DNA of 64,000 nt from IMG/VR virus record IMGVR_UViG_3300024239_000015, positions 124,001 through 188,000 of that record; one strand, given 5' to 3'. Positions 4,882-29,703 of the stretch are shown here, one piece after another (within the stretch, counting starts at the first letter, position 1; each line of letters opens with the position of its first letter). A program made the translations under genes and the position numbers. The notes under the pieces are model-generated. The model did no database searches and was not told the origin of the DNA. It was given only the letters and a program-made list of their open reading frames with translations.

Positions 4882-5586
4882 TCAGTTTTTTGTTTGTACG
4901 TAACGGTCTAACAGTTCCCAATTCAATGGCGTATACAAAGGTTCTATTTGTAACCCTTCTTTACTGAACGTGAGTACCTGCCCTTTGTGTTTCTCTATCA
5001 GCCCTAATTCGGCTTTCCCTAGTATCCGGTGTTCCTTTTTATACACCGAGTATTTCTTCCATCGAGCTTGCATTTTCTTTTTATCTCTGGTGTCCTTAAA
5101 GTCTCCAGCAAAGAAGCTCTGGAATAAACCCAACTTTGCTGTAGGTAAACCACACACCCGCACCACGGCTTCTGACTGTTGGACAAAGACTTGATCTACA
5201 GCCTGTTCTTTTAACGCCTCGAGGTGTTCTACTAATTGTCCTTCTGCGTCTTTAAAAACCTTCAGTACTTTCCCTACCGTAACACGCTCCCCTACGGTTT
5301 CTGTTAAACGTTTCGCTAGACTCCCCATGCGTTTATACAACAATGAAACGTCCTCCACCAACAAGTGTTCAAAGAACGCAACCTGCGAGCAGCTAGACGT
5401 ATTCCCAAACGACTGCGTGTACGTAAGGTCTGGGTGATACAACACTTGTAGACAGGCAGATATTTCTTTTGGGGAGATTCCTAATTCTACTTTCATGTAT
5501 TTACGGATCTGTTTGTTCAGTAACTTATCGAATACCACGACTGGTTCTTTATGACTGTAGTCTCCGTATTTCATCACTCTACGCAT
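4882..5586 (-). CDS. Hypothetical basic protein
   Basis: 234-aa ORF, first gene after the promoter-like motif at 5622. Confidence 0.75.
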   Translation of the reverse strand: MRRVMKYGDYSHKEPVVVFDKLLNKQIRKYMKVELGISPKEISACLQVLYHPDLTYTQSFGNTSSCSQVAFFEHLLVEDVSLLYKRMGSLAKRLTETVGERVTVGKVLKVFKDAEGQLVEHLEALKEQAVDQVFVQQSEAVVRVCGLPTAKLGLFQSFFAGDFKDTRDKKKMQARWKKYSVYKKEHRILGKAELGLIEKHKGQVLTFSKEGLQIEPLYTPLNWELLDRYVQTKN

Positions 5587-5621
5587 GGTACGTATACCTT
5601 TGATTGATTGTCTCTACCTGT

Positions 5622-5647
5622 ATATTAAATACCTGTAATTCTTTCCA
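5622..5647 (-). promoter_or_regulatory. 26-bp phage promoter-like motif
   Basis: atattaaatacctgtaatt..., first 13 nt identical to the consensus. Confidence 0.6.
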
Positions 5648-5659
5648 GACCGCATAGAC

Positions 5660-5945
5660 GGGAGGGGTGTGTCCCCTCCCTCTTAGCTACTGGACTCTCG
5701 TCTTAGGAGAAGGGTAGTGGGTGTAAGCACCCACGCTACTCCTGTCTGTCTAGAGAGAGTACTACCTCTCTCTAGGGATAGGGATGGTGAGTGTCTGGAC
5801 ACTCACACTACTGAAGGATACTGTCTGTATTATGACAGACAGTTCTCTCTCCTGTATCTGTAGATACAGGGAATAAGGATATCGTTCATAGAGAGGATAA
5901 GGAAGTCATTCACTACGTTCATTCCTCTATACCTTATCTCTCTAT
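5660..5945. repeat. Array of about seven inverted repeats in a divergent intergenic region
   Basis: Stems at 5660-5680, 5714-5739, 5750-5775, 5787-5806, 5820-5843, 5851-5870 and 5888-5902/5932-5945, read directly from the sequence. Confidence 0.85.
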
Positions 5946-6105
5946 TCTCTCTACTATATTAACTAATAGTTACACACACAAAAAGCCCCACCCCAACCCC
6001 TCCCATTGCTGGAAAGAGGCAGTAGTCAGTGACTACATAGTATACGTAGACTCAGTGTAAAAAATAACTATTCTTTGATACAAAGAGTAGTGAGCGAGGT
6101 GTGTG

Positions 6106-6366
6106 ATGCAACAATCTGTAACCATTCCTGCGAATGGGTATATAAAGGTTTTAGTGAACGTACGTCCTGGTGCTGTGTTCTCTGTAGTGCCTGGTGTAGG
6201 AGGACACATGCACGTCGAGTTCACGGTAGTCGACGGAGGACATCGATATCTGTGGGATAAAGCGAGTGTAAACAGTCCTACGTGGCATGTGGTAGACTGT
6301 CCTATGGCTGAAGTGTATGTAAAGGCAGACGTAGCTGCTGGTGTATTTGAATGGAGAAACCCATGA
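6106..6366 (+). CDS. Hypothetical protein translationally coupled to the endolysin
   Basis: GAGGT RBS; its TGA overlaps the endolysin ATG (ATGA at 6363-6366). Confidence 0.7.
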   Translation: MQQSVTIPANGYIKVLVNVRPGAVFSVVPGVGGHMHVEFTVVDGGHRYLWDKASVNSPTWHVVDCPMAEVYVKADVAAGVFEWRNP

Positions 6367-6974
6367 AACAACCGTTAACGAAGAATGAATGTATCCACGA
6401 AGTCGTGGTGGTAGAAGGTGGGTACGTGGATGACCCGAATGACTTAGGGGGAGAGACCAACTATGGGATCACCAAAGAGACAGCAATGAAGTACAAACAC
6501 TGGTGGGCTCACTACAAGTGGGACGGAAACATGCGGACAATGCCAGTGGATTTTGTGTATGCGGTGTATGACGTGGAGTATTGGCAACGTTTGAACTTAG
6601 ACACCATCGCAAAACGCTCTGTAACGCTCGCTAGTCGATTATTTGACTTTGGTGTGAATGCTGGTATAGCTAACGCAGCACAAGCGCTACAACGCAGTTT
6701 AAACGTGTTAAATAAGCAGGGTACTTTGTATCCTGATATTGAGTTAGGGACGATCATTGGTCCTGTGACTCTAAAAGCGTTTGAAGGGTATGCGAATACC
6801 GTGACGAAAGACTCAGCTGGGTTTGAGAAACTGACGTTGATGATCTACGGTTTACAGATCGCACACTACGTGAAGATCTCGGAAGAGCGTCAGAAGAACG
6901 AAGACTTTACACGGGGGTGGGTGAACCGTGTATGGAAAGCATTCTGGAATTACGCGGAGTGGTTGACACCTTAG
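6363..6974 (+). CDS. Endolysin, glycoside hydrolase family 108 with C-terminal peptidoglycan-binding domain
   Basis: Catalytic EGGYVDDPNDLGGETNYGIT motif; C-terminal QIAHY...NEDFTRGWVNRV; start at 6363 behind GGAG. Confidence 0.92.
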   Translation: MKQPLTKNECIHEVVVVEGGYVDDPNDLGGETNYGITKETAMKYKHWWAHYKWDGNMRTMPVDFVYAVYDVEYWQRLNLDTIAKRSVTLASRLFDFGVNAGIANAAQALQRSLNVLNKQGTLYPDIELGTIIGPVTLKAFEGYANTVTKDSAGFEKLTLMIYGLQIAHYVKISEERQKNEDFTRGWVNRVWKAFWNYAEWLTP

Positions 6975-6979
6975 GTGTA

Positions 6980-7012
6980 GCATAGAGGGAGGCGTAAAGC
7001 CTCCCTCTATGC
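6980..7012. terminator. Bidirectional terminator between convergent genes
   Basis: gcatagagggaggc/gcctccctctatgc perfect stem. Confidence 0.85.
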
Positions 7013-7039
7013 TGGGTTTGTAACCAAGATACGAACTCG

Positions 7040-9057: not shown

Positions 9058-12000
9058 TTATAACTGCACCACCCAATCCGTACCATCACGAATCACACGC
9101 AGCTCCCCGTTCACACTTTCGAACCATGGGTTGCTATCGGTGGTTCCATCTGGTAAGTAGAAGGTTCCACTGGTGGTTGTAAAAGTCACACGATTGGCGG
9201 TAAACGGTTTATACACCACGACATGGTCTTGGTCGATGAACGTGTTGTCCAACACGATCGACACGTTCCCTAACCGCGTATCTGCGTAGAGTTTTCCTTC
9301 TCCAGCGACCCGAGTGAGGTTGCGTGTACCGGCTGTTGCTTTCGTGTACGTAGCGACTGTCGGCGTAGACGCTTCTGACGGTTGTAATACCCCGCCTACA
9401 AACATCCATCCCGTGGTCCCTCCCACAAACACCAACCGACTGGTAGTCCCACTTTGGTTGACGTCGACGTCTTCCACTAACCCCATGATCGACTGTCCGT
9501 TTCTCTTCAGTACGAGTTTGTTTAAACCAAACTTACTCGCAGCGTCGTAGAAACTGACGGTGTCATTTACAGCTGGTGTGGCGGGTAACGTTAACTCCAC
9601 GATGCCCGCAGTGGTGTCTACGCCGTACACCGTCTTACTGACAGCTGTCGTATTCGCAGAGATCAACTGGAACGTTTCCCCCCCAGCGGCGTCTCCTCCC
9701 AACGCAGCAAGAGAAATCTCTTGTTCTACGGTGAGATACCCGGAGCCCAAGGCAGCGGCAGTTGCGATACCTACCGACGCTACGTTGTTGTAATCGACAA
9801 TCTCAACAAAAAGCGACATGTTTGTCATCGCTTCGGTGGCGTGTACGTCGATGTACGCGAAGTTACCTGTGTAGCTTGGATGGTAGACGATTCGGATTTT
9901 ATCAAACACAGCCCCGGAATAGTTACCGTAGTCCAACAACTTCACTTGTGGGTTTTGTCCGAAATAACACGAGTATTGTACACGTACAACGCCATGATCT
10001 CCCGATACACTCCAACGTAAGTTTAGTATGCCGTCAAATCGGTTAATCCCAGAACTGGAAGAAACAAGCCGGTACCACCCATTGACTACCGTATTAACCG
10101 TAGCGCTGCTGGTTCTAAGTGCCCTTGAACTTAAGTCATACGCTTGTTTGACGGCTGTAGCAGATGCCGACAACGTAGAGCTGGTTGTAGAAACACTGTC
10201 CGATAACTGGGAGATACCCGCGACACTGGTGGTGGCGACGGGTAGTCTCGCTACCGGTACCGTACCAGTATTTAAGTTACTGGCGTTGGTGTAATACGAG
10301 CCTTCTTGGTCGTCCAGTAGGTCGACGTTTAAGTTGGCTACTTTGGTCGTAGACGCAACGATCAACGGCGCGGTGCCTGTAGCGATTTCGGAGATCAACA
10401 CATTCGCACTGATACGCTCAAAGAACTCACGTGCAGACCCACGCACTGCAGTGTAGATCGTGCCTGTAGACGTGCCTACAGCAAGCCCCGTCCCGTAGGT
10501 GATGGTGTGACTTCCATTAGAAGCAATCATCTCCGATTCAACATGGTAAACACGATGCCAAGCGTCATTCCAGACCTGGATTTCGTGTTGACCTTGTCCG
10601 GTTTGTACTACTCGTATTTGACTTCCGGGACCAAACACATTTGCGTTGTCTGGTACGTTCAGCGTTGTTCCGCTCGCGCGTACTAAACTTACAGTGTAAT
10701 AGCTGGTCTTCAGAAATTCCGATGCTGTCTGTGAACCAAAATTGTTTTGCGGGTCGACTAACTTAAATCGCCACGCGACAGCACTATAAGCACTATTGGC
10801 TAGAGTAACTGTAACCAGAGTTCTCCATGTTTGTTCCGCACCCCACGCTGGCGACCATGCATATTTGGCAAAAGATAAATTCCCGTAACGCAACCCAGCC
10901 GCCAGCACTTTCATCCCAGTTAAGGTTTGAGTACTAGTGATGTCTACCGCATCCGTCAGTCCGTAGCCCACCACCGTAGTGGGATTCGTACCTGCTGTAA
11001 CCCGCCCTTTCGCGTCCACTGTGACACTGCGATACGTACCCGCAGTCACTCCACTGTTTGCAAGCGTAAGCGCACCTGTGGCGTTCGCAGACCCGTTAAA
11101 CGACGCCGACCACGTACCATCTCCTGTAATAGCGATGGTTCGTGTGTTTGTCAACGTTAACGCACTGTTTACATTCAAAGCGATGGCGTCATTGTCTAAT
11201 AACCGAACTCGTTTATCAACAATAACCAGTCCGGTTAAATCACCGGCGGCGAAGTTAGGTTGGTCGCTGTATAACGTGTAACTAGCAACGCCTGCAGAGT
11301 CGGTGTGTATGACAACAGCAGTCAGTTGGGCGTACGTGGTATCCCAACGCATGTAGAAATCCACAACAGTAGGGCCTGCATTAGAAACAACCACATACCC
11401 TAACGTAAAGTGAGGGCTTTCATCCCCCACGATTTGTGCGGTAACAAATGGGTTAGAACCAAAAGCGGCCTGTTGTTTCACCCGTAACGTAATTTCACAC
11501 GCCCGTAAAATACCATCCCCAGATCCGACAGAGGTCCCTTCCAACAAAACAATCATTTCGCTGTATAGGTTCGTTATCGTCATCGTGGAGATTTTCGTCC
11601 AACGTCCGCTGAGCGTACCACCGGAATTCGTTGTACTGATACGGCGTTGTAACTGACTCGCTGTGGCTGCGTTCCCTGTGGTATTTTGGTTGAGTGTAGG
11701 AATGTCTGCCGCTACTAACGTCGTACCACCTGTCACACGTCCTTTCGCGTCTACAGTCACTTTCGTGTACGTACCCGCGGTGACTCCTGAGTTCGCCAAG
11801 GTTGCAGTGCCAGACACGTTTGCAGAACCATCGAAGTTCACCGTCCAGCTGACGTCACCCGTGGAGGTGATGCTTCTGACGGTTTGTAGCTTCACTGCAG
11901 TATCTGCGGTACCCGCTGCGGGGTTGACCCACACGTACGCACTACCCGACCATCTGTACAGCCGGCCTGTGTCTATCGCGAGATACAGTTTACTGGTTTC

Positions 12001-15000
12001 TCCAGTGACTGGGAAGGACGCGAGTGTAGCGTACTCCAACACGTCGTCCACGTAACTCGGTAATTGCGCTGCAGGTACTTTACCATCCGCACCTAACGTC
12101 GCTACGCCGTTCACGGCTCCTTTTTCACTCAATGGTATTTTTGTCAGTGAGGAATCGTAGGCCGCTTTGACAGCCGAAGCTGTTGCAGCCTCAGTGGTAC
12201 TGGTGGAGGTCACGGTGTTGTTTAATTGCACCACACCCGTCTGTGCTGTCGACGCGCTACGAATGGTTTGGGTGCTTGCTGAGGTAATCCGACCTTTTGC
12301 GTCTACTACAATGACCGGTACGCCAATCGTACTACCATACGTCGCTGCTGTTACACCGGAGTTACTGAGCGTAAGTGCGCTAGTCACGTTACCGCTACCA
12401 TCAAACAACACACTCCACGTACCGTCACCAGTAATAGAGATCGTCCGTGCTGTGGCCAGTTTAGTCGCTGTGCCGGTATTGATGGAGTCGAGCGTGGTAT
12501 TCACCCAGCCGGTTCCGCTGCGTGTCAGCACTTGCCCGTCTATCGGAGACGTCACCGTCACGTTCGACAGTGAGTCCAACGTGTGGTTGTGCGTAGACGA
12601 CGCAGCATCGGTAATCCCGTATCCCGCTAAGGTGGTGGGCTTGCCTGTGGTGATCTTCGACCAGTCTAATGCAGGAATGTCTGCCGCTACTAACGTCGTA
12701 CCACCTGTCACACGACCGTAGTTATCTACAGTGACTTTCGGGTACGTACCGGAGGTTATCTTTAAGTAGAAGTTGGCTTGGTAGGTGCTGTAACCAGCTG
12801 GGATAGACCCTAACGTTCCGACTGGAGTCAACGACCATCCTAACATACTACTGGACTGGACGTCCATTTGAATTGCAGTATGCGTACCCGACGCTCGTAG
12901 TTCTACAAACGCATAGTTTCCAGCATAGGTCGTGTGGTACACAACACGTACTGCATCAAATCCACCTGAACCAAAACGACTGAAATCCTTCTGGATCGCT
13001 GTGGGTTCTAGCCCATAGTAGATCGATGAGTCAAAACGCACAGAACCGTGATGGGAACTGATAGACCACCGCACCCAGAACTCTCCCGTGCAGCGATCCA
13101 CACCCACCGGCGATGAAGCGACACGATACCACGTACCCGACGTTGTGTTTAACGTCCCACTAGTTCTTGCTGCGTGAGGAGTGGTGTCACGCAACACTTT
13201 CCCTTGGTTTGCAGTTAATGCTAAGGTGGTGCTGGTGCTGGTTAAGTTGTCATTGAGTTGTACTAAACCCGTTTGCGATGTAGTTCCAAGACGGACTGAG
13301 TTGTGAGCGATGGATGTCACCCGCCCTTTGGCATCTACGGTGACAGTAGGTATAGTTACGTTGTTACCAAACGTACCCGCCGTCACGCCACTGTTCGCTA
13401 ACGTAAACGCCGCACTGACGTTTGCAGAGCCGTTAAAGTCCACAGTCCACGTACCGTCACCGGTCGTGGAGATCGTTCTTGAAGTCTGTAACGTCGTTGC
13501 AGTCCCAGCATTCCCTGTAACAGAGATACCCCAGGTTCCTACAGCGTTGCTCCCATCCAGTAACGCACCATCAGAAATTCCGTATCCAGCAAGTGTCGAT
13601 GGTTTACCTGTGGTAATCTTCGACCAATCTAAACTAGGAATATCCGCTGCTACTAAAGACGACCCGTTGGTGACTCGTCCTTTCGCATCTACGGTGACCT
13701 TCGGATAGGTGCCTGCAACCACACCAGAGTTACTGAGTGTAAGTGCTCCTGTGGAGTTCGCAGAACCGTCGTACGTCGTGGACCACGTCGCATCGCCTGT
13801 AATACTCAACGTACGCGCAGTCGCGAGTTTAGTCGCTGTGGATGCATTACCAGTCAGCGCACCTATAAAGGTAGGTGCTGTAATATTCCCCACAAACAGC
13901 ACATCTGGTCCAGTAACGAAGTACGAAAACACAACGTGTGCGACTCCATCGGCTCTACGGAAGAAACTCACCCGATCGGCAGCTTCCCCCGTCGCGAACG
14001 CTGGAGAAGCGTCACCGTTGTAGAACATACCACCACCGAACGTGGTCGATTGCCCGACGTAGACATATCCAGTTCCCTGGACGTCCCCGTGGGCCTCAAA
14101 GCCAGCTCGATGTGCATCGCCCGCTAAAGCGCGTACGACCGTATTTGCTGCACGGTTCGTTGCACCCACGTCGACATTTCCGTCGATTGTCCCGCCGGCT
14201 TTAGGAAAAGCTCCGATATCTGCTAAAGTAAACTCCACATCCGCAGAACCGTTGACTGATCTGGTTAGTAAACCAATGGTGATGTTTCTTGCGGTACCCC
14301 ACGTCAGTGTGGTGATATTCGCTGTACCATCAAACGACGTCCCGTTGATCGTCCGTGCGGTTTGTAACTTGACAGCGGCATCGGCTGTACCTGAGTTTTC
14401 ATTGATCCAGATATACACACTACCTGACCAACGATACTGCCGGTTGTCATCCAAAGCGACGTAGATCTTTCCAGTCTCACCTGTAGCTGGAAATGCGGCT
14501 AAGTTCGGATACTCAAGAATGTCATCCACGTAACTCGGCAATTGAGACGACGGCACCAACCCCTGGGCATCCAACGTGGCTACGCCGTTTGCTACCCCAC
14601 GTTGTGCGAGAGGAATCATCGTCGCAGCGTAGTCGTAAGTCACTTTCACTGCGTTGGTAGTTGCTGCCTCAGTGGTACTGGTAGAGGTCACGGTGTTGTT
14701 TAATTGCACCACACCCGTTTGACTCGTCGTCGCGCTACGGATTGTCGTGTTAGAAACAGCGGTGATTCTACCTTTCGCATCAACAGTCACTGTAGGAACA
14801 GCAATGCTGGTGCCGTAACTCCCTGCGGTAGCGCCAGAATTAGCCAAAGTGAACGCTAACCCTAAGTTGGCAGAACCGTTGAAACTTCCAGAGGCTGTGC
14901 CATCACCAGTAATAGAGATGGTCCGGGCTGTAGTCAGTGTTGCTGCACTACCAGAGATACTAATCGCCCACGTACCGGTAGCACTCGTACCGTCGTTCTT

Positions 15001-15993
15001 AGGCACGTCGGTAATTCCGTACCCGTCACGCGTCGTAGGTTTACCTGTAGTAATTTTACTCCAGTCTAGGTTAGGGATGTCCGTCGCACTTAACGTCGTG
15101 GCAGTAGTCACACGACCTTTCGCGTCTACTGTGACTTTCGTGTACGTCCCAGTGACTACGCCAGTGTTCACTAACGTGACAGGAATCGTGACGTTTGTCG
15201 TACCATTGAAAGAGATTCCACCGGTGGCGTCACCACCCACGGATAACGTCCGTGCGGTTTCTAAGCGGGTGGCTGTAAGTGCGTTACCCGACACAGACAT
15301 AGGCCATACGGAACCGTACTCTGTAGAGTTGGTTGCAAGTTCTAAACGCGCACTGGTCGGATTCCACCCAATCTTCACTGCAATCGCCGGACTCTGTCCT
15401 GCACCAGTACCTTGCTGTACTGGAATGAACCCTAAATTAGGTTCTTTAGAATCCAGAGCTGCTTGCAAACCCGTCACTGTAGAGATAGGTTGTTCACCGG
15501 TGTGGTTGGTACGGGACAATAAAAACGCATCCGTTTGGTTTTTCGTCGCTTCGGCGGCTATGCCGTCTAATTTCACGTAGTGTGACGTCGACATAAAACC
15601 CGCTTGAGCACCGGAAGCTAACGCGTGGGCGCTACCTCCTGCACCAAAGTGGCTATTCAGCTGAGCTTGTAGTTTACGAAACGCCTCAAAAACACTATCG
15701 GTGGCTGCAATAGCGGCTACGGTACCTGGGGTAAAACCAACCAGTACCGTGTCACGCACTCTCGCTTGCGTGAAGTAGAGGTTAGTCGCCCCTTCTGGTA
15801 CAGCGTCACTACTGACGACATCCGCAGAGTCTTCATACCCTACTCCTGGGACGTAGTTATACAACCGTCCGGTATCTATGGTTTTGTAGGTGTATTGCGT
15901 ACTGCCCGTGACGGGTAAGTCGGCAAACGTAGCGACCTCGACGATGTCGTTTAAGTACCCTGGTAAATTCGCGGTTATATTAATCGACGTCAT
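9058..15993 (-). CDS. Long tail fibre protein (2311 aa) with many internal repeats
   Basis: Repeats of ARTISITGDGTW..FNGSAN...TL.NSGV.AGTY.KVTVDAKGRVT, TSTSTTEAAT..AVK.AYD fibre repeats and LPSYVDD.LEY modules; start reassigned to 15993 (ATGA overlap with upstream stop, GGAG RBS). Confidence 0.9.
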   Translation of the reverse strand: MTSINITANLPGYLNDIVEVATFADLPVTGSTQYTYKTIDTGRLYNYVPGVGYEDSADVVSSDAVPEGATNLYFTQARVRDTVLVGFTPGTVAAIAATDSVFEAFRKLQAQLNSHFGAGGSAHALASGAQAGFMSTSHYVKLDGIAAEATKNQTDAFLLSRTNHTGEQPISTVTGLQAALDSKEPNLGFIPVQQGTGAGQSPAIAVKIGWNPTSARLELATNSTEYGSVWPMSVSGNALTATRLETARTLSVGGDATGGISFNGTTNVTIPVTLVNTGVVTGTYTKVTVDAKGRVTTATTLSATDIPNLDWSKITTGKPTTRDGYGITDVPKNDGTSATGTWAISISGSAATLTTARTISITGDGTASGSFNGSANLGLAFTLANSGATAGSYGTSIAVPTVTVDAKGRITAVSNTTIRSATTSQTGVVQLNNTVTSTSTTEAATTNAVKVTYDYAATMIPLAQRGVANGVATLDAQGLVPSSQLPSYVDDILEYPNLAAFPATGETGKIYVALDDNRQYRWSGSVYIWINENSGTADAAVKLQTARTINGTSFDGTANITTLTWGTARNITIGLLTRSVNGSADVEFTLADIGAFPKAGGTIDGNVDVGATNRAANTVVRALAGDAHRAGFEAHGDVQGTGYVYVGQSTTFGGGMFYNGDASPAFATGEAADRVSFFRRADGVAHVVFSYFVTGPDVLFVGNITAPTFIGALTGNASTATKLATARTLSITGDATWSTTYDGSANSTGALTLSNSGVVAGTYPKVTVDAKGRVTNGSSLVAADIPSLDWSKITTGKPSTLAGYGISDGALLDGSNAVGTWGISVTGNAGTATTLQTSRTISTTGDGTWTVDFNGSANVSAAFTLANSGVTAGTFGNNVTIPTVTVDAKGRVTSIAHNSVRLGTTSQTGLVQLNDNLTSTSTTLALTANQGKVLRDTTPHAARTSGTLNTTSGTWYRVASSPVGVDRCTGEFWVRWSISSHHGSVRFDSSIYYGLEPTAIQKDFSRFGSGGFDAVRVVYHTTYAGNYAFVELRASGTHTAIQMDVQSSSMLGWSLTPVGTLGSIPAGYSTYQANFYLKITSGTYPKVTVDNYGRVTGGTTLVAADIPALDWSKITTGKPTTLAGYGITDAASSTHNHTLDSLSNVTVTSPIDGQVLTRSGTGWVNTTLDSINTGTATKLATARTISITGDGTWSVLFDGSGNVTSALTLSNSGVTAATYGSTIGVPVIVVDAKGRITSASTQTIRSASTAQTGVVQLNNTVTSTSTTEAATASAVKAAYDSSLTKIPLSEKGAVNGVATLGADGKVPAAQLPSYVDDVLEYATLASFPVTGETSKLYLAIDTGRLYRWSGSAYVWVNPAAGTADTAVKLQTVRSITSTGDVSWTVNFDGSANVSGTATLANSGVTAGTYTKVTVDAKGRVTGGTTLVAADIPTLNQNTTGNAATASQLQRRISTTNSGGTLSGRWTKISTMTITNLYSEMIVLLEGTSVGSGDGILRACEITLRVKQQAAFGSNPFVTAQIVGDESPHFTLGYVVVSNAGPTVVDFYMRWDTTYAQLTAVVIHTDSAGVASYTLYSDQPNFAAGDLTGLVIVDKRVRLLDNDAIALNVNSALTLTNTRTIAITGDGTWSASFNGSANATGALTLANSGVTAGTYRSVTVDAKGRVTAGTNPTTVVGYGLTDAVDITSTQTLTGMKVLAAGLRYGNLSFAKYAWSPAWGAEQTWRTLVTVTLANSAYSAVAWRFKLVDPQNNFGSQTASEFLKTSYYTVSLVRASGTTLNVPDNANVFGPGSQIRVVQTGQGQHEIQVWNDAWHRVYHVESEMIASNGSHTITYGTGLAVGTSTGTIYTAVRGSAREFFERISANVLISEIATGTAPLIVASTTKVANLNVDLLDDQEGSYYTNASNLNTGTVPVARLPVATTSVAGISQLSDSVSTTSSTLSASATAVKQAYDLSSRALRTSSATVNTVVNGWYRLVSSSSGINRFDGILNLRWSVSGDHGVVRVQYSCYFGQNPQVKLLDYGNYSGAVFDKIRIVYHPSYTGNFAYIDVHATEAMTNMSLFVEIVDYNNVASVGIATAAALGSGYLTVEQEISLAALGGDAAGGETFQLISANTTAVSKTVYGVDTTAGIVELTLPATPAVNDTVSFYDAASKFGLNKLVLKRNGQSIMGLVEDVDVNQSGTTSRLVFVGGTTGWMFVGGVLQPSEASTPTVATYTKATAGTRNLTRVAGEGKLYADTRLGNVSIVLDNTFIDQDHVVVYKPFTANRVTFTTTSGTFYLPDGTTDSNPWFESVNGELRVIRDGTDWVVQL

Positions 15994-16865
15994 AACCGAG
16001 CTCTCCATGTAGTGTCATTTATTTTTATAAACCGAATGGTCATTACGTTGCTGTAGTTGACAGACGGTGCAGTTTGGTTGTTAAACAAGATCAGTTCGTT
16101 CGCTACGTCGTTTACTGTGATCACCGCAGTAAAGGTATCATCCGCTGTGTCTACTGTAACGATACTGCCGATAGGGACGGTATTTAGCAAAGGCAAGAAC
16201 ACGTTGACGTTGTTTGCTGTCACCATGTAGTTCCGTCCAGGGAGTGCAGAAAACACATCGGTGGAGACGAGAACCACTTTTGCGTTCTCAGTGAGTCGAT
16301 TGACTTCTTCTGTCAGGTACGCCACTTGCGCTTGCAATGCAGCAGAGATCTCTATTTTCTCTGCGATATCCAGTAGTGCGTCTCTGACGTCTTCCATGCC
16401 ATACAGCTCACTCGCGTGGTGTAGGTGTGGTGCTGGAGGAAACTGCACTGGCGCACCGACTAAGTCCACCCACGCCACAGGACGGTCGTCTAAGTTTAAT
16501 AACTGTAGGTACGCTGCAACGGTGTCGGGGTAGGTGACATACGACCCACCAGGCACTTGGTAGTCAAGTTCAACGTCGCCGTAGACGTCAGGATTTAAAA
16601 GCTGGATGATAAAGAAAGCAGCATGCCCTGAGCGTACTGTGATCTCAGAGTTCAGCTCCAAGAATCGATAGTCTTTGTTTCTTTCTAAAGGAGTGGGGTT
16701 TCCCACTTGCCGTAATTCAAAACCGTGTCCGTAGAACACGCCTTCACGTGGGACGATCGTCCTTTGCACGTACTGGGGGATGGTCCATTGTTCACCTGTA
16801 ATGCGATTGCTTAACGCCTCAGCAGTCAGGTCTAATGGGTACTTGTTTAACGCCGGTGTACTCAT
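15990..16865 (-). CDS. Baseplate/tail-fibre adaptor, phiKZ gp131-like family paralogue
   Basis: N-terminal YPLDLTAEALSNRITGE and PVQFPPAPHLHHASELYGMEDV shared with 17294..18193 and 20495..21919. Confidence 0.7.
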   Translation of the reverse strand: MSTPALNKYPLDLTAEALSNRITGEQWTIPQYVQRTIVPREGVFYGHGFELRQVGNPTPLERNKDYRFLELNSEITVRSGHAAFFIIQLLNPDVYGDVELDYQVPGGSYVTYPDTVAAYLQLLNLDDRPVAWVDLVGAPVQFPPAPHLHHASELYGMEDVRDALLDIAEKIEISAALQAQVAYLTEEVNRLTENAKVVLVSTDVFSALPGRNYMVTANNVNVFLPLLNTVPIGSIVTVDTADDTFTAVITVNDVANELILFNNQTAPSVNYSNVMTIRFIKINDTTWRARL

Positions 16866-16902
16866 TGCTCACTCCGGTCCTCAAAAAAAGACGTGAATAA
16901 AA

Positions 16903-16928
16903 GGCGGAGTGGTATGACCCACTCCGCC
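16903..16928 (-). terminator. Intrinsic terminator/hairpin
   Basis: ggcggagtgg/ccactccgcc stem with a downstream T run on the minus strand. Confidence 0.7.
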
Positions 16929-16943
16929 CACTGCTTTGGTGTT

Positions 16944-17312
16944 TTACAGTTGAATCACCCACTGTGTGGCACTCAACTTAACCAGTGTGATTTCAGCCGG
17001 CGTGTTTTCTACGTAAGGGGCGTTGTCTACGGTTCCATCAGGCATCAGCAGGTCTGCTCCTGGAATACGGTAGTCGACTCGTCCTACGGAGAATGCTTTT
17101 TGTAAAGTGACTTGATCTTTGATTGCATACGTTGCGTGATCTAACGTCACGGTGACCGAGGTGTCTCTGGTATCCACCACGTACCGTGCCACTCCTGACA
17201 CACGAGAGAGCGTCAGTGTAGGAACGTCAATGGTATCGCCTAACAAGATCGTGTTCGTTCCGGAGACCGATGCTTTTCGTTGAGCTAGATTAATCATTCT
17301 AAAATACTCCAT
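16944..17312 (-). CDS. Small virion protein homologous to the C-terminal tip of the long tail fibre
   Basis: DTRDTSVTVTLD...MPDGTVDNAPYVE...WVIQL versus fibre DTRLGNVSIVLD...LPDGTTDSNPWFE...WVVQL. Confidence 0.7.
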   Translation of the reverse strand: MEYFRMINLAQRKASVSGTNTILLGDTIDVPTLTLSRVSGVARYVVDTRDTSVTVTLDHATYAIKDQVTLQKAFSVGRVDYRIPGADLLMPDGTVDNAPYVENTPAEITLVKLSATQWVIQL

Positions 17313-18193
17313 CGATCTGCAGCAGTTTTCATCACAAAGAACGAGCGATCTAGGTTACAAAGGGCAGAGGTATCGGTTACACCCCACCATTCGAGCAGCT
17401 CTGCTCCTCCTGGGGTTTGTAACGTCCACGTGTGTCCTGGGGTTTGACTGAAAACGATTTTGTCTCCAAGCGCTACTGAGCCAATCGCTGGAAGTGTTGC
17501 AACCAGACCATCTCCGACGTGGTAGTGCTTTGAGACTTGTACCGTAGAGTCTACAGAGAGAAACGTACCAAAAGCAAACCCTACACTTTTATTGACGTTA
17601 GGAAGAATACTGTTGTACGCATTCTCTACGTTACCTAGCCGTGTGAGGATTTCTGTGATCTGAGCTTCGTTTCCTTGCCCCATAGCGTTGAGGATTTCTG
17701 TCAGCGCATTAACAACGTGCTCCATTCCGTAGAGTTCACTCGCGTGGTGTAGGTGAGGAGACGGTGGAAACTGGACAGGTAAACCGACGATGTTCTGCCA
17801 CTGGACAGGACGGTCGTCTAAGTTCAGCGCATCAAGGATCAACTGGATTGCTGCAAAGTTACTGGAGTACGTCCCACCGATGACTTGGTAGTCACAGGAG
17901 AGTGCTCCTTCAATCGCTGGGTTGATAATGTTCACGATCGCGTACACAGGTTTACTGGAACGGATCGTTGCATCGGAGTACAGATACAGTAACTGGTAGT
18001 CGGTGCCTTGAGTCAGTGTTTCTCCGCCAGGCAAACGAGTGAGGACTAAACTCTCTCCGTAAAACGGTCCTTCGTATAACGCAAACGCACGATTCCGGTT
18101 GAGTGGAATCGTTTTCAGCTCCCCTGTAATACGGTTAGTAAGTGCAGTACCCGTCAAATCCAACGGGTACTTAGCAATTGACGGATATGACAT
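17294..18193 (-). CDS. Baseplate/tail-fibre adaptor, gp131-like paralogue
   Basis: KYPLDLTGTALTNRITGE and PVQFPPSPHLHHASELYGMEHV. Confidence 0.7.
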   Translation of the reverse strand: MSYPSIAKYPLDLTGTALTNRITGELKTIPLNRNRAFALYEGPFYGESLVLTRLPGGETLTQGTDYQLLYLYSDATIRSSKPVYAIVNIINPAIEGALSCDYQVIGGTYSSNFAAIQLILDALNLDDRPVQWQNIVGLPVQFPPSPHLHHASELYGMEHVVNALTEILNAMGQGNEAQITEILTRLGNVENAYNSILPNVNKSVGFAFGTFLSVDSTVQVSKHYHVGDGLVATLPAIGSVALGDKIVFSQTPGHTWTLQTPGGAELLEWWGVTDTSALCNLDRSFFVMKTAADRWSILE

Positions 18194-18208
18194 CTCTGAC
18201 TCCAGGGT

Positions 18209-18691
18209 TTACTTAAGATGGACGGTCGGTAAGTTTAACAACCATAAGTCCTGTGGAACGATTCGGTTTAAGGACTCATCGGTACGGATCAGTGGGATAC
18301 CTGCTTCCTCGAATACAAAAGGTACGTACTCACTACAGATCCACCGATTGGGGTTATGCCAATCCCGTTGGAAGACGATCCCAAAGATGGCTAAGTAGTC
18401 GTAGTGTTTTCCAAGCTCTGCCTCGGCGATTGCTTTGGCGTTGAGGTAAGTGGCAGCATCTACAGTAACCGATACCACAGCAACAGATTTGTAACGGTCT
18501 ATAAAGTCGTTTAAAGAAGTCGTGATCACTCCTTTAAACGCAACAGCTTCATAGACTTTCGGTTGACTGAGGTAATGCGGGTGGTCAAACAACAACCCGC
18601 AGTGACTCCACTTTGACCACGTCCATCCACGAATGGCTTTACCGCCTATCTTTGTACTTGAACCAAAAATGATCTTCAGTTCACATTCCAT
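18209..18691 (-). CDS. Permuted papain-like (YiiX/YebB-type NlpC/P60) amidase
   Basis: His motif WSHCGL precedes LGKHYDY and the Cys motif WICSEYV (permuted order); start at 18691 behind AAGGAG. Confidence 0.8.
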   Translation of the reverse strand: MECELKIIFGSSTKIGGKAIRGWTWSKWSHCGLLFDHPHYLSQPKVYEAVAFKGVITTSLNDFIDRYKSVAVVSVTVDAATYLNAKAIAEAELGKHYDYLAIFGIVFQRDWHNPNRWICSEYVPFVFEEAGIPLIRTDESLNRIVPQDLWLLNLPTVHLK

Positions 18692-18726
18692 GACTTTTCT
18701 CCTTTTACGGGGTGGACGTAGCGTAC

Positions 18727-19197
18727 TCATGCTAAAAACGTGATGTCGGCAGACACTACTTTAAACGGAGCTCCGATGGCCTTCAACGCCACGTTACAAC
18801 GGTCAATCAGAATTTTCCAGTCTCCGCCAACGTCAGGTATTTTACCCCAAATAGTTAACTCGCCGTCTACAATAGTGGCGTTGAGGTATACTTCGTCTGT
18901 CGTCGCACGGCCAGCAGCGTGTCTCACGAACGGTAATTTTAAAACCATGGGTTGTCCTTCCAACGGATGTCCTTCCGGCCACACGTAGCTGATCTCCAGT
19001 AACGGCGTGCCGTCTTGAGCTTTTAAGCCGGCAGATACAGATAACGTATCTGCCGGAGAGCAGTAGTAAAAGCCGTTGGGATACGGCAGTGCCTCAACTC
19101 CCGCCACAGTTACGTTTTTATTGGGTAAGATCACGTCGAGTCTGAGATCGACCGCGATTGTAGGTTGTTCGCGCGCGTCTATGATGCTATTCGTCAT
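18727..19197 (-). CDS. Hypothetical protein in the tail cluster
   Basis: 156-aa ORF with GAGG RBS. Confidence 0.7.
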   Translation of the reverse strand: MTNSIIDAREQPTIAVDLRLDVILPNKNVTVAGVEALPYPNGFYYCSPADTLSVSAGLKAQDGTPLLEISYVWPEGHPLEGQPMVLKLPFVRHAAGRATTDEVYLNATIVDGELTIWGKIPDVGGDWKILIDRCNVALKAIGAPFKVVSADITFLA

Positions 19198-19207
19198 CGA
19201 TCGTTCC

Positions 19208-20482
19208 TCATTTTATTCTAACGTAATCGTACTGACCCGATACACTATCGTACACTGAACCAGCAGCCGGAATACTTATCACACCACCCCCGCTAGTCAC
19301 GGATGTGAGTGTTTGATTGGGTAGCGACATGGCTCCTCTCTTTCCCTGTATGAAAACATTGGCAGCACTTTTCACTCCGTACGGACGAATGGTTGTCATC
19401 TCCCACGTAATCAGATCCGCTGTTCTCCACACCTGAGCGAGTGGGTTAGTACTCGGATGCTCGTAAGCGTACCAGTACCCGTCCGCATAAAAGGAGGTAT
19501 ACAACGCAAAACCATTGGGTGATACCACATCAACACGCGACCAAGAAACACCGCTGTCGTTGCTGTAATAAAAACCAGAACGTAAACGTACTGGGTCGTA
19601 AAAAGGAACACAGAGTTTATGAGATGCTGGGCCCAAGAAAAAGAACCCGATGGTCGCGTTAGTTCCAAAAACAGCTGGAGCCGGACCATCCGTCGACACG
19701 TCCATCGATATCCCAGCAGACCAAGTCCCAGTCGCGCCGGTAGCGGAGCGATAGGCTCGAAAAATATAAGAGCCGTTCGACCACAACGCAACTACGTTTG
19801 TGCCGTCGTGTATCAAATCGATTAAATTTGGTTCTGTGGCTGTGTAGCTCGCGATTGTTGGGGCTCCGGTGGTTGAAATCAGTGCGATGTAAGCTGTGTC
19901 GCTAGATTTTGTGTTCGAGTGAGCGTACATTCGGGAAGAATCGCTCGTCGTGCGCACTGCCGTGCCGGCGGCAAAAGCGATCGCCGATCCTCCATTAGCG
20001 GTACTCCACGTTATCGCGTCGGTCGACGTGTGTATTCTCGACTCAGAATCAACAGCGAAATACCGAGAAATTCCTGGGACGTACGCATTCCCGATCACTC
20101 TCTGGTTTTGGGTGATCGTAGGACTAACAGTACAACGCACCCACGTCAACCCTCCGTCATCGGAATACCATGCCGCACAATCCGCGGCATTACTGCCGGT
20201 GTGGATTAAACTCAACCTGTTAGAAGGCCCCAGAGCATGAAATGCCGCAACGGTGTTCTTGGCGTCGCGTAATAAAACATTGAGTGGTATCCAAAGTTTA
20301 CCGGGCGTCCAGTAAGTTGTATCGTAGTAGTTCTGGTCTCTCTCGAGGAACCCTACTTGTAGGTAGACTCTACCACCAGTTTCGTAACGCACATCGGTGG
20401 TACCTCGATACATCCTTATCAACTCACCGACTTCAGCGCCAGCGGCGCTGCTGTTGGGAAAAAATTGACTAAAATCAGCCAT
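19208..20482 (-). CDS. Tail-associated beta-propeller (Asp-box) putative receptor-binding protein
   Basis: SDDGGLTW, STDAITW, SNDSGVSW Asp boxes; ends YDYVRIK versus VDYVRAK in 7040..8257. Confidence 0.65.
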   Translation of the reverse strand: MADFSQFFPNSSAAGAEVGELIRMYRGTTDVRYETGGRVYLQVGFLERDQNYYDTTYWTPGKLWIPLNVLLRDAKNTVAAFHALGPSNRLSLIHTGSNAADCAAWYSDDGGLTWVRCTVSPTITQNQRVIGNAYVPGISRYFAVDSESRIHTSTDAITWSTANGGSAIAFAAGTAVRTTSDSSRMYAHSNTKSSDTAYIALISTTGAPTIASYTATEPNLIDLIHDGTNVVALWSNGSYIFRAYRSATGATGTWSAGISMDVSTDGPAPAVFGTNATIGFFFLGPASHKLCVPFYDPVRLRSGFYYSNDSGVSWSRVDVVSPNGFALYTSFYADGYWYAYEHPSTNPLAQVWRTADLITWEMTTIRPYGVKSAANVFIQGKRGAMSLPNQTLTSVTSGGGVISIPAAGSVYDSVSGQYDYVRIK

Positions 20483-20494
20483 TTATAAAACTCC

Positions 20495-29201: not shown

Positions 29202-29240
29202 TAGCTCTCCTGATCCTAAACACAGGATTGGACAAAAAAG

Positions 29241-29260
29241 AAAGGACCCGAAGGTCCTTT
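29241..29260 (-). terminator. Intrinsic terminator (UUCG loop)
   Basis: aaaggacc-cgaa-ggtccttt plus T run. Confidence 0.85.
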
Positions 29261-29268
29261 GCTTTTGT

Positions 29269-29703
29269 TTACCGACCATTAACGCCACGCTGCGGCCACA
29301 CAAGCGTTCCGAAAGAGACCGGATCGATGCTCTGTGGAGCCCTAAATTCTATCGGCGGTTTACCCTGAGCTGGAACTTTAATCCGAGCAGCGGTAGCTGA
29401 CACATACACCGACGAGTGAGTGTCTGTAAAGTCATCCATGTCCAGAATATCCGCCGCGGTGGTACAACGAGTCGTGTCAAGTTTTGCACTATTACCCATC
29501 AATACTTTTGCTGTGAGTGGGTGGTCCGTAGCGATTTGTAGTAGACCGCTTTTGGTAATACCTGACACCAGACGGTCACCTTTCTCGGTAGCGAATGACC
29601 CACCGCCGATATCACACTCCTTCACACCACTCTTGTCTTCCCGTGTTGAGCTGATTTGCACCGCCCAACGTTTGAGAAGCCGGTTGAAGTCCACTTCACT
29701 CAT
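29269..29703 (-). CDS. Hypothetical protein
   Basis: Start MSEVDFNRLL at 29703 behind GGAG, overlapping the ATPase stop. Confidence 0.65.
   Translation of the reverse strand: MSEVDFNRLLKRWAVQISSTREDKSGVKECDIGGGSFATEKGDRLVSGITKSGLLQIATDHPLTAKVLMGNSAKLDTTRCTTAADILDMDDFTDTHSSVYVSATAARIKVPAQGKPPIEFRAPQSIDPVSFGTLVWPQRGVNGR

What the first reader, a model, noticed from the sequence alone, without database searches (positions are those of the whole stretch)
5660..5945. Dense array of near-perfect palindromes in a divergent intergenic region
Seen: about seven consecutive inverted repeats in ~290 bp with different sequences, including ctagagagag/ctctctctag, gtgagtgtc-tg-gacactcac, actgtctgt/acagacagt, cctgtatct-gt-agatacagg and atagagaggataagg/ccttatctctctat. 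They are purine/pyrimidine-skewed, and two have only 2-nt spacers. An AT-rich patch follows at ~5953-5984. One terminator would suffice here. Inference: perfect Watson-Crick symmetry with tiny loops suggests DNA cruciforms or protein-binding sites, such as a replication origin, a packaging site or a genome-anchoring site. A hairpin-rich small RNA is the alternative.
Basis: partly seen in the sequence, partly recalled or inferred. Interest (0 to 1): 0.65.

Follow-up and report, generated by a model that had tools for sequence, protein, structure and literature searches.

The report
Hairpin array in conserved phage noncoding locus
The palindromes are real and far beyond chance, and they lie inside a noncoding locus shared by a group of phiKZ-like jumbo phages that is most likely transcribed from the minus strand into a ~385-nt structured RNA, though a DNA-level role such as a replication origin is not excluded.

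Summary
There are seven stem-loops at 5660-5945. Five have perfect stems of 8-10 bp, against at most 2 in 5000 dinucleotide shuffles, and this is the densest such cluster in the 233-kb genome.

The window belongs to a phiKZ-like jumbo phage. The array sits in a 519-bp gap between divergent genes. On the minus strand it is bracketed by a rare promoter-like box (T-tract plus TATACTATG, 6036-6069) and by the phage's usual terminator signature (hairpin H1 plus TATGC).

Hairpin H7 carries a 13-nt loop sequence, TCACTWCGTTCAT, that is invariant in Aeromonas phiKZ-like phages whose RNA polymerase subunit is only 23-25% identical to the window's. The enclosing stem covaries. In those relatives the locus has compensatory changes and G.U pairs that work only on the minus strand.

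The five perfect palindromes (H2-H6) are specific to this lineage. They fill a spacer that is variable in the relatives.

Best reading (confidence about 0.45): a minus-strand structured leader or noncoding RNA of about 385 nt lying upstream of an early-type promoter.

Three features of the palindromes keep a DNA-level role alive: strict Watson-Crick symmetry, 2-nt spacers and no RNA-type tetraloops. No RNA data exist, and the function is unknown.

The parts
5652..6036 (-). Predicted structured transcript (leader or noncoding RNA, about 385 nt). It runs from the G of the TATG box to the TATGC that follows H1.
   Evidence: Promoter-like box and terminator signature on the same strand. Fold z-score -7.28. 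Both ends are inferred, not measured.
6036..6069 (-). Promoter-like box: a T-tract, about 10 nt, then TATACTATG. The start is predicted at 6036.
   Evidence: Three copies in the genome, all on the minus strand and all noncoding. The block is conserved in the Aeromonas phages as an invariant TATGTAATTG preceded by a T-tract. In phiKZ the G of the late-promoter TATG is the transcription start (PMC4666361).
6022..6036 (.). H9: a 7-bp palindrome with a 1-nt centre, at the predicted 5' end.
   Evidence: Sequence and folds.
5997..6019 (-). H8: a pyrimidine-rich arm paired with a G-rich arm. Three of its pairs are G.U, so it forms only on the minus strand.
   Evidence: Sequence and fold. It corresponds to the U/C-rich versus G-rich helix of the relatives.
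5986..6004 (-). G-rich tract on the minus strand. Four runs of 3-4 G separated by 1-2 nt fit the G-quadruplex pattern.
   Evidence: Sequence. G-rich tracts occupy the same position in all relatives.
5953..5984 (.). AT-rich patch containing the conserved ACTAAT block.
5888..5945 (.). H7, the core hairpin: a 14-bp stem with one bulge and a loop of about 29 nt. On the minus strand it is followed directly by the G that completes a TATG.
   Evidence: The outer stem has a different sequence in four lineages yet stays complementary.
5897..5930 (.). 34-nt block that matches AhC3_1 and PS2 at 33 of 34 positions.
5910..5922 (.). Invariant 13-nt core: TCACTWCGTTCAT on the plus strand, AUGAACGWAGUGA on the minus strand.
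   Evidence: Identical in 13 loci from four phage lineages apart from the A/T position; CF8 also differs just 5' of it. Single copy in this genome.
5851..5870 (.). H6: perfect palindrome, 9-bp arms, 2-nt spacer.
5820..5843 (.). H5: perfect 9-bp stem, 6-nt loop.
5787..5806 (.). H4: perfect palindrome, 9-bp arms, 2-nt spacer.
5750..5775 (.). H3: perfect 10-bp stem, 6-nt loop.
5714..5739 (.). H2: imperfect hairpin of 7 bp, a 2-nt bulge and 3 bp, with a 4-nt loop.
5652..5680 (-). H1 (5660-5680) followed on the minus strand by GTCTATGC. This is the phage's canonical terminator signature.
   Evidence: The genome-wide pattern of hairpin plus TATGC or a T-run lies 5-20 nt after stop codons. The phiKZ terminator motif is a stem-loop plus TTAT (PMC10914365).
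5617..5654 (-). AT-rich multi-copy promoter-like motif (TCGAA, spacer, TATAG, TAATAT), early type by analogy. It drives gene 4882-5586.
   Evidence: Weight-matrix score 34.6 bits. About 19 copies in the genome, all on the minus strand.
4882..5586 (-). 234-aa gene of unknown function downstream of the locus. Metagenome contigs carry an alternative allele.
6106..6974 (+). Plus-strand island: an 86-aa ORF (6106-6366) and an endolysin (6351-6974).
6979..7013 (.). Bidirectional terminator, a 15-bp stem that includes GCATA and TATGC, closing the plus-strand island.

Best explanation
The palindrome array is the middle part of a minus-strand transcription unit that encodes no protein.

Proposed course of events:
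- A phage RNA polymerase starts at the TATG box, at about 6036.
- It transcribes a short 5' hairpin, a G-rich segment, the conserved core hairpin H7, and then the five lineage-specific hairpins H6 to H2.
- It meets the phage's ordinary terminator, H1 plus TATGC, at about 5652.
- Directly downstream lies an AT-rich multi-copy promoter for the next gene cluster.

The unit therefore acts as a structured leader, attenuator or stable noncoding RNA placed in front of an early-type promoter.

The sequence-specific working part is the invariant loop AUGAACGWAGUGA on top of a covarying stem. It presumably binds a conserved partner, either a protein such as the phage RNA polymerase or another RNA.

The perfect palindromes H2-H6 are an expansion of a spacer that is unstructured or different in relatives. 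They most plausibly add stability, pausing or insulation.

What is shown: the structures, their statistical excess, the conservation pattern, the covariation and strand asymmetry in relatives, and the positions of the signals. What is inferred: transcription itself, both transcript ends, the promoter classes, the partner and the role of H2-H6.
For: 1. Canonical hairpins in this genome lie 5-20 nt after a stop codon and are followed on the transcribed strand by TATGC or a T-run. This matches the published phiKZ terminator motif (PMC10914365). H1 has exactly this signature on the minus strand, but no ORF precedes it.

2. The T-tract plus TATACTATGTAG motif occurs three times in the genome, always on the minus strand and always in noncoding sequence. 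One copy sits 18 nt before a gene start. Another, at genome position 22191, precedes a short hairpin, a TATGCGG and an early-type promoter, which is a miniature of this locus.

3. The same order of elements is found in AhC3_1 and in Chaoshanvirus phages: TATG box, G-rich segment, core hairpin, terminator-like hairpin, multi-copy AT-rich promoter. The motif ATAGATATTAT occurs 4-11 times per genome, on one strand only, with none in the controls.

4. RNAalifold on nine Aeromonas-phage loci gave -29.1 kcal/mol, 66 pairs and 15 compensatory pairs on the minus strand. The plus strand gave -13.3 kcal/mol, 23 pairs and 5 compensatory pairs.

5. Folding of the AhC3_1 locus gave -172 kcal/mol (z -5.6) on the minus strand and -118 kcal/mol (z -2.9) on the plus strand.

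6. The H7 stem covaries across four lineages while the loop stays invariant.

7. H8 in the window forms only on the minus strand. The predicted RNA folds with z -7.28.
Against: There are no RNA reads. Only four DNA metagenome runs from one study hold the sequence, and they are kept as contigs.

H1 and H3-H6 contain 45 Watson-Crick pairs and not one G.U pair. Two have 2-nt spacers, which an RNA hairpin cannot use. None has the GNRA- or UUCG-type loops common in this phage's ordinary terminators. That pattern fits DNA-level symmetry, or recent palindrome perfection, better than long-term RNA selection.

H2-H6 are absent from all relatives.

The second copy of the core in Ferozepurvirus (copy 'a') keeps the core but has no stem, no TATG box and no significant fold.

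The promoter assignments rest on motif recurrence and on analogy with phiKZ.
Confidence: 0.45

Rival explanations
1. The locus is a DNA-level cis element, most likely a replication origin of the transcription-primed kind. The TATG promoter fires across a C-rich template, giving a G-rich RNA that forms a stable R-loop or quadruplex. The palindromes extrude as cruciforms or fold in the displaced strand to load helicase or primase. The invariant core is an initiator-binding site.
For: The locus is single-copy in this genome and is one of its largest noncoding gaps.

The palindromes are perfectly Watson-Crick with short spacers.

The DNA folds are equally significant on both strands, with z -4.9 and -5.3.

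A G-rich tract lies downstream of a promoter, and there are AT-rich patches.

The Aeromonas phages carry 18-nt direct repeats of the form GGACCCC, spacer, CTTGAC.

The core is conserved even where no stem exists, in copy 'a'.

No origin is known for these phages.
Against: Cumulative GC skew falls monotonically and shows no inflection at this locus.

The 18-nt repeats are explained as one strand of a long RNA helix that has compensatory changes and G.U pairs.

The strand asymmetry of structure in relatives argues for selection at the RNA level.

The palindromes are not conserved in relatives, and no replication genes lie nearby.
Confidence: 0.22
2. The array is only a transcriptional insulator, a stack of pause or termination hairpins. 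It separates the late tail-fibre and lysis module on the right from the early-type gene cluster on the left. It makes no RNA product with a function of its own, and the core is a regulatory protein site for the neighbouring promoters.
For: The locus lies between tail-fibre and endolysin genes on one side and a cluster headed by an early-type promoter on the other.

H1 and H7 carry terminator signatures.

Perfect palindromes fold in transcripts of either strand.

The neighbouring gene slot is variable, both in the metagenome contigs and in Ferozepurvirus.
Against: H2-H6 lack a T-run or TATGC on either strand.

A dedicated bidirectional terminator already closes the plus-strand island at 6979-7013.

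Insulation does not explain a 13-nt invariant loop on a covarying stem, nor the conserved 5' domain in relatives.
Confidence: 0.18
3. The conserved core is the start of a tiny gene (MN[EV]V[NS]...). Its ribosome-binding site, GGAUAAGGA, is hidden in the H7 stem, as in a leader peptide or a small toxin.
For: On the minus strand an AUG lies 6-9 nt after a UAAGGA-like sequence in most lineages. That sequence pairs with CCUUAUCC.
Against: The open frames are 11-33 codons long and are unrelated beyond about 8 residues.

All variation inside the invariant block falls at second codon positions. No third position varies, even though the RNA polymerase subunit is only 23-25% identical between these phages. 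That pattern is the opposite of protein-level constraint.
Confidence: 0.05
4. The palindromes are a by-product of mutation with no selected function. Possible sources are template-switch perfection of quasi-palindromes and local duplication in period-2 low-complexity sequence.
For: The arms share a period-2 composition. Three units share a roughly 21-nt direct repeat at 67-76% identity (family D1). The stems are perfect and are absent from relatives.
Against: Five perfect stems were found against at most two in 5000 dinucleotide shuffles. The array is identical in contigs from four metagenome runs of one study. It sits in the densest structural cluster of the genome, within a conserved locus.
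Confidence: 0.07

Closest known systems
phiKZ-type intrinsic terminators (stem-loop followed by TTAT/TATG; Putzeys et al. 2024, PMC10914365)
   Same: H1, and weakly H7, are G+C-containing stem-loops followed on the minus strand by TATG(C). Dozens of ordinary inter-gene hairpins in this genome look the same.
   Different: H2-H6 have no such tail on either strand. No coding gene precedes H1. Seven hairpins are stacked where the genome otherwise uses one.
Short structured 5'UTR-derived and intergenic RNAs of phiKZ found by ONT-cappable-seq and Grad-seq (PMC10914365)
   Same: A promoter is followed by a structured noncoding stretch and a terminator upstream of a gene, in a phage of the same kind.
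   Different: The phiKZ RNAs are 71-196 nt long. No sequence or Rfam relationship was found. The present unit is about 385 nt, has about ten stem-loops and carries a deeply conserved loop.
Cis-acting antitermination or attenuation leader RNAs (HK022 put, lambda nut, riboswitch-type leaders). This comparison rests on my own knowledge.
   Same: The order is promoter, conserved structured RNA with sequence-specific loops, then a terminator before the genes.
   Different: There is no sequence similarity. Binding to a polymerase or any factor is untested. In the window an independent promoter follows the terminator.
Transcription-primed origins (T4 oriF and ori(uvsY), T7 primary origin, ColE1 RNA II). 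This comparison rests on my own knowledge.
   Same: A promoter fires into a region with AT-rich patches. The RNA is G-rich over a C-rich template.
   Different: There is no skew signal, no adjacent replication genes and no demonstrated R-loop. Covariation in relatives points to a folded RNA.
PeSL mobile regulatory cassettes of T4-type phages
   Same: A promoter plus stem-loop module lies next to a hypervariable block of small early genes. The core is present at two genomic sites in Ferozepurvirus.
   Different: PeSLs are short and occur many times per genome. This locus occurs once or twice per genome and is much larger.

Membership tests
phiKZ-type intrinsic terminator | Stem-loop followed on the transcribed strand by TTAT/TATG or a U-run | tested here: met
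   H1 is followed by GTCTATGC on the minus strand. H7 is followed by the G that completes a TATG. This is not met for H2-H6 on either strand.
phiKZ-type intrinsic terminator | Lies a few nucleotides downstream of a coding gene's stop codon | tested here: not met
   No ORF ends upstream of H1 on the minus strand. The nearest minus-strand gene ends at 7040, beyond a plus-strand island.
Any curated RNA family (Rfam 15), tRNA or tmRNA | Covariance-model score at the family's gathering threshold, or an ARAGORN call | tested here: not met
   No match at gathering score in the 64-kb window. The best match in the region had E = 1.1. ARAGORN found no genes in the whole genome.
Iteron-type or DnaA-type replication origin | Several copies of one initiator-binding repeat next to an AT-rich unwinding element | tested here: inconclusive
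   In the window the palindromes all differ, and the only direct repeat is 24 nt in two copies at 75% identity. A 32-nt AT-rich patch is present. Relatives carry 18-nt repeats, but these pair into an RNA helix.
Replication origin (any type) | Inflection of the strand-compositional skew, or a coverage peak | tested here: not met
   Cumulative GC skew is monotonic across the genome. Coverage could not be read from contigs.
N4-type hairpin promoters | 5-7 bp stem with a 3-nt loop and conserved bases, recognised by a virion single-subunit RNA polymerase | tested here: not met
   The stems are 8-10 bp, the loops are 2-6 nt and the hairpins share no sequence. The phage has phiKZ-type major head protein and RNA polymerase subunit.
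CRISPR array or RNA anti-CRISPR repeat unit | Repeated, near-identical units | tested here: not met
   Every hairpin has a different sequence. The only CRISPR-repeat model hit was weak (E 0.04) and lay inside the endolysin gene.
Headful pac site or defined genome terminus | Read-start pile-up, or termini mapping to the site | not testable with these tools
   Only contigs were available. The 127-bp terminal repeat of the record may be no more than an assembly overlap of a circularised contig (my inference). A related giant Aeromonas phage showed no defined termini by PhageTerm (PMC12390700).
Candidate new RNA family (core hairpin of Aeromonas-type phiKZ-like phages) | Invariant loop AUGAACGWAGUGA on a stem that covaries | tested here: met
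   This holds for the window, AhC3_1, three Chaoshanvirus phages and five Ferozepurvirus 'b' loci. It was absent, allowing up to 1 mismatch and judged against controls, from five other phiKZ-like genomes.
Candidate new RNA family | Actually transcribed, with defined ends | not testable with these tools
   No run on record as RNA holds the sequence.

The most novel reading that the evidence does not exclude
The locus encodes a previously unrecognised functional RNA of nucleus-forming jumbo phages. Its invariant loop docks onto a conserved machine. One version is the phage's own multisubunit RNA polymerase, acting in cis like a put element to control read-through into early-gene cassettes. The other is the replication apparatus, with the RNA serving as a primer or R-loop RNA, which would mark the first origin defined for this phage family.
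Probability: 0.15. Interest if true: 0.8.

Novelty: new variant of a known kind. Interest (0 to 1): 0.55.

Why it matters
Little is known about noncoding elements of nucleus-forming (phiKZ-like) jumbo phages, and I found no replication origin or regulatory RNA of this kind described for them. This locus is cheap to test. It is a single conserved noncoding site with a 13-nt sequence that has stayed fixed while core proteins diverged to about 24% identity. It is also present in Aeromonas phages that have been isolated in culture. Whether it proves to be a leader RNA, a trans-acting RNA or an origin, it would give a handle on how these phages switch or insulate early and late expression, or on where they start replication. 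The palindrome array itself shows how such a locus can expand in one lineage.

Tried and rejected
- **Known RNA families and tRNAs.** Rfam searches and ARAGORN found nothing.
- **Expression data.** The run search found only four DNA metagenome runs from one study, all kept as contigs. No transcript, read-end or coverage information could be obtained.
- **Closer relatives of the window phage.** Two flanking proteins and several DNA patterns returned only identical copies of the same phage. No covariation test of H2-H6 was therefore possible.
- **Host origin of the core.** Scans of bacterial genomes and metagenomes gave hit counts in line with my rough chance estimates, apart from one PS2-like contig and the source contig itself.
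- **A long-range closing helix (5640-5648 with 6009-6017).** I dropped this. The left arm is part of a promoter variant that also occurs at genome position 212759.
- **TATGC read as a late promoter.** The same tail also follows hairpins at convergent gene ends, so I treat it as part of the terminator.
- **The micro-ORF reading.** Rejected on the codon-position pattern.
- **Antisense target search for the loop in this genome.** No convincing target was found. A 12-nt identical copy inside a gene at genome 69692 has the wrong sense to be a target of the minus-strand RNA.
- **The core in five other phiKZ-like genomes.** It was absent.
- **Flanking proteins.** No Pfam or PHROG family matched.
- **Genome-wide sliding-window folding.** This timed out twice. 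I replaced it with folding of all long intergenic regions.
- **A pair count on a structure of my own over the 800-column alignment.** I left this out because it would have needed a very long typed structure string.

Full report
**What the window is**

The window is bases 124001-188000 of a 233,377-bp virus record. The record's 127-bp terminal overlap may be no more than an assembly overlap of a circularised contig (my inference). Its large proteins match phiKZ-type families: major head protein phrog_3231, an RNA polymerase subunit and internal head proteins. The major head protein is at most about 34% identical to that of any deposited phage.

Nearly all genes are on the minus strand, with small plus-strand islands. 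Cumulative GC skew falls monotonically and shows no origin-like turn. The genome has no tRNA genes. The window has no Rfam match at gathering score.

**Checking the observation**

| Hairpin | Coordinates | Form |
|---|---|---|
| H1 | 5660-5680 | perfect stem |
| H2 | 5714-5739 | imperfect |
| H3 | 5750-5775 | perfect stem |
| H4 | 5787-5806 | perfect arms, 2-nt spacer |
| H5 | 5820-5843 | perfect stem |
| H6 | 5851-5870 | perfect arms, 2-nt spacer |
| H7 | 5888-5945 | one bulge, large loop |

Five perfect stems of at least 8 bp lie in 301 nt. Among 5000 dinucleotide-preserving shuffles, none had more than two. This is the densest window for such hairpins in the genome. It also has the lowest folding energy per nucleotide of the 26 long intergenic regions. 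RNA-fold z-scores are -5.2 for the plus strand and -7.2 for the minus strand. The DNA folds are about equal on the two strands.

The gap is divergent. It lies between gene 4882-5586 on the minus strand and an 86-aa ORF (6106-6366) plus an endolysin (6351-6974) on the plus strand.

**The phage's own punctuation**

I listed every perfect hairpin in the genome against a rough gene map. The ordinary inter-gene hairpin has a purine-rich 5' arm. It lies 5-20 nt after a stop codon. On the transcribed strand it is followed by TATGC or a T-run. Hairpins at convergent gene ends carry the tail on both sides. This agrees with the published phiKZ terminator motif, a stem-loop followed by TTAT (PMC10914365).

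H1 has this signature on the minus strand, but no coding gene precedes it. Just downstream, at 5654-5617, lies a 34.6-bit copy of an AT-rich motif. That motif has about 19 copies in the genome, all on the minus strand, and looks like an early-type promoter.

At the other end of the gap, 6036-6069 holds a T-tract followed by TATACTATGTAG. The genome has three copies of this motif, all on the minus strand and all noncoding. One sits 18 nt before a gene. Another, at genome position 22191, is followed by one small hairpin, TATGCGG and an early-type promoter. That second site is the same layout as this locus in miniature.

In phiKZ the G of the late-promoter TATG is the transcription start (PMC4666361). 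By that analogy the unit would run from 6036 to about 5652 on the minus strand. That 387-nt stretch folds into about ten stem-loops with z -7.28. One of them, H8 at 5997-6019, needs three G.U pairs and so forms only on the minus strand.

**Relatives**

A BLAST search of the gap found only a short match in two Aeromonas jumbo phages. Following that lead gave homologous loci in four groups:
- AhC3_1;
- Chaoshanvirus (AerS_266, ZPAH34, CF8);
- Ferozepurvirus, which has two copies, 'a' and 'b';
- one metagenome contig, L060.

These are phiKZ-like phages with chimallin and two multisubunit polymerases (PMC10673249). Their polymerase subunit is only 23-25% identical to the window's. That is more distant than a Xanthomonas phage at 35%, which lacks the element.

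Despite this, a 34-nt block (5897-5930) matches AhC3_1 and PS2 at 33 of 34 positions. The 13-nt core TCACTWCGTTCAT is invariant in all thirteen loci.

In the window, AhC3_1, Chaoshanvirus and Ferozepurvirus 'b', this core sits in the loop of a 10-18 bp stem. The outer part of that stem has a different sequence in each lineage yet stays complementary. That is the pattern left by long divergence under selection for a stem and for a specific loop sequence. It is not the pattern of recent transfer.

**Strand evidence from relatives**

I aligned nine Aeromonas-phage loci on the minus strand. The order of elements is:
1. the upstream gene's terminator;
2. a T-tract and an invariant TATGTAATTG box;
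3. a U/C-rich strand paired with G-rich repeats, closed by an invariant 8-bp helix;
4. a small covarying hairpin;
5. the ACTAAT block;
6. the core hairpin;
7. an A-rich spacer;
8. a hairpin rich in G.U pairs followed by a U-rich run;
9. in AhC3_1 and Chaoshanvirus, a copy of ATAGATATTAT.

ATAGATATTAT occurs 4-11 times per genome on one strand only, with none in the controls.

RNAalifold gave 66 pairs, 15 of them compensatory, at -29.1 kcal/mol on the minus strand. On the plus strand it gave 23 pairs, 5 compensatory, at -13.3 kcal/mol. The AhC3_1 locus folds at -172 kcal/mol on the minus strand against -118 on the plus strand.

I take this as moderate evidence that the family is a minus-strand RNA. 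The 18-nt direct repeats, which look like iterons on the DNA, are one strand of that long RNA helix.

**Where the palindromes fit**

H2-H6 occupy the position of the A-rich spacer in relatives, between the core hairpin and the terminator. They are not conserved. They are therefore an expansion specific to this lineage.

Three of the units share a roughly 21-nt direct repeat (family D1), which suggests that the array grew by local duplication.

The palindromes differ from the phage's ordinary RNA hairpins in three ways. They have no G.U pair in 45 bp, counting H1 and H3-H6. Two have 2-nt spacers. None has a GNRA- or UUCG-type loop. These points favour DNA-level symmetry or recent palindrome perfection, and they are the main reason my confidence in the RNA reading stays below one half.

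**What it probably does**

My best reading is a minus-strand structured leader or noncoding RNA. It starts at a rare TATG-type promoter, carries a sequence-specific loop for a conserved partner, and ends at a terminator placed in front of an early-type promoter. The palindromes would add stability, pausing or insulation. Its function is not known.

The rivals are:
- a transcription-primed replication origin or another DNA site;
- a plain insulator;
- a micro-ORF, which the codon-position pattern rules against;
- a mutational by-product.

I found no paper describing an origin or such an RNA for these phages.

**Limits**

- No RNA data exist for this phage. The four DNA runs come from one study, may be the source of the assembly, and are kept as contigs.
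- The gene map I used is a rough longest-ORF map.
- The promoter classes are inferred from motif recurrence and from analogy with phiKZ.
- The alignments come from MAFFT and are not structure-aware.
- The covariation counts come from few and unevenly related sequences.

Noticed in passing
window 4957-5516: Contigs from two of the four metagenome runs carry a minor form in which 558 nt of gene 4882-5586 are replaced by 525 other letters. The branch point lies at 5516-5572, right beside the locus. The gene next to the array is therefore a variable cassette. The equivalent slot in Ferozepurvirus holds different small genes in different phages.
   Followed up: partly
window 3493, 5654, 28552, 32987, 46214, 52428, 60350 (minus strand). 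About 19 copies genome-wide.: An AT-rich promoter-like motif of about 38 nt (TCGAA, spacer, TATAG, TAATAT) is found only on the minus strand. It is often directly preceded by a hairpin plus TATGCCGT. It is probably the early, virion-polymerase promoter class of this phage.
   Followed up: partly
window 50653 (plus strand); G000 positions 5317, 18484, 86035, 204373: There are five copies of GATATAGTCTG, each followed by a 6-8 bp hairpin. The hairpins differ in sequence, and most have an A-rich 4-nt loop. They lie 37-113 nt upstream of gene starts. They may be a second promoter class with a 5' stabilising hairpin.
   Followed up: no
window 6979-7013: A 15-bp perfect bidirectional terminator whose stem includes GCATA and TATGC lies between the endolysin and the convergent minus-strand gene. 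Similar symmetric terminators mark most plus-strand islands.
   Followed up: partly
L003:2898-3157 and L089:2351-2852 (Aeromonas phage PS2): Ferozepurvirus genomes carry the conserved core twice. Copy 'b' is a structured copy between co-directional genes. Copy 'a' is a short unstructured copy at a divergent junction next to a 1050-aa gene. The core of copy 'a' is the closest match to the window's.
   Followed up: partly
L075, L077, L078, L084, L087 (IMG/VR contigs of 18-66 kb): An 18-nt match to the core (GTTATTCACTWCGTTCAT, continuing as ATAAC as in ZPAH34) is exactly conserved in five related smaller phage contigs. It lies just downstream of a sigma-70-like promoter, in a long noncoding region full of AAGATCTT and ATTTCAC repeats. 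The total number of hits across the collection is near my rough chance estimate, so this may be coincidence.
   Followed up: partly
window 29236-29695: A second long noncoding gap of 460 nt is strongly structured on the minus strand, at -0.34 kcal/mol per nt. Other large gaps lie at G000 214052-214697, 5318-5728 and 18485-18891.
   Followed up: no
window 9058-16008 and 15990-21919: A 2316-aa tail-fibre-like protein contains many repeated domains. It is followed by several proteins that share one N-terminal domain (phrog_2163). This suggests a set of interchangeable receptor-binding proteins, as reported for AerS_266.
   Followed up: no
G000 69692-69703 (outside the window): A 12-nt exact copy of the core (TTCACTACGTTC) lies inside a minus-strand coding gene. 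I estimate about 0.03 such copies by chance. Its sense is wrong for pairing with the minus-strand RNA.
   Followed up: partly
L069:1-724 (Aeromonas phage ZPAH34): The deposited circular record of ZPAH34 starts about 320 nt from the core, inside or beside the homologous region. I do not know whether that start was chosen for a reason.
   Followed up: no
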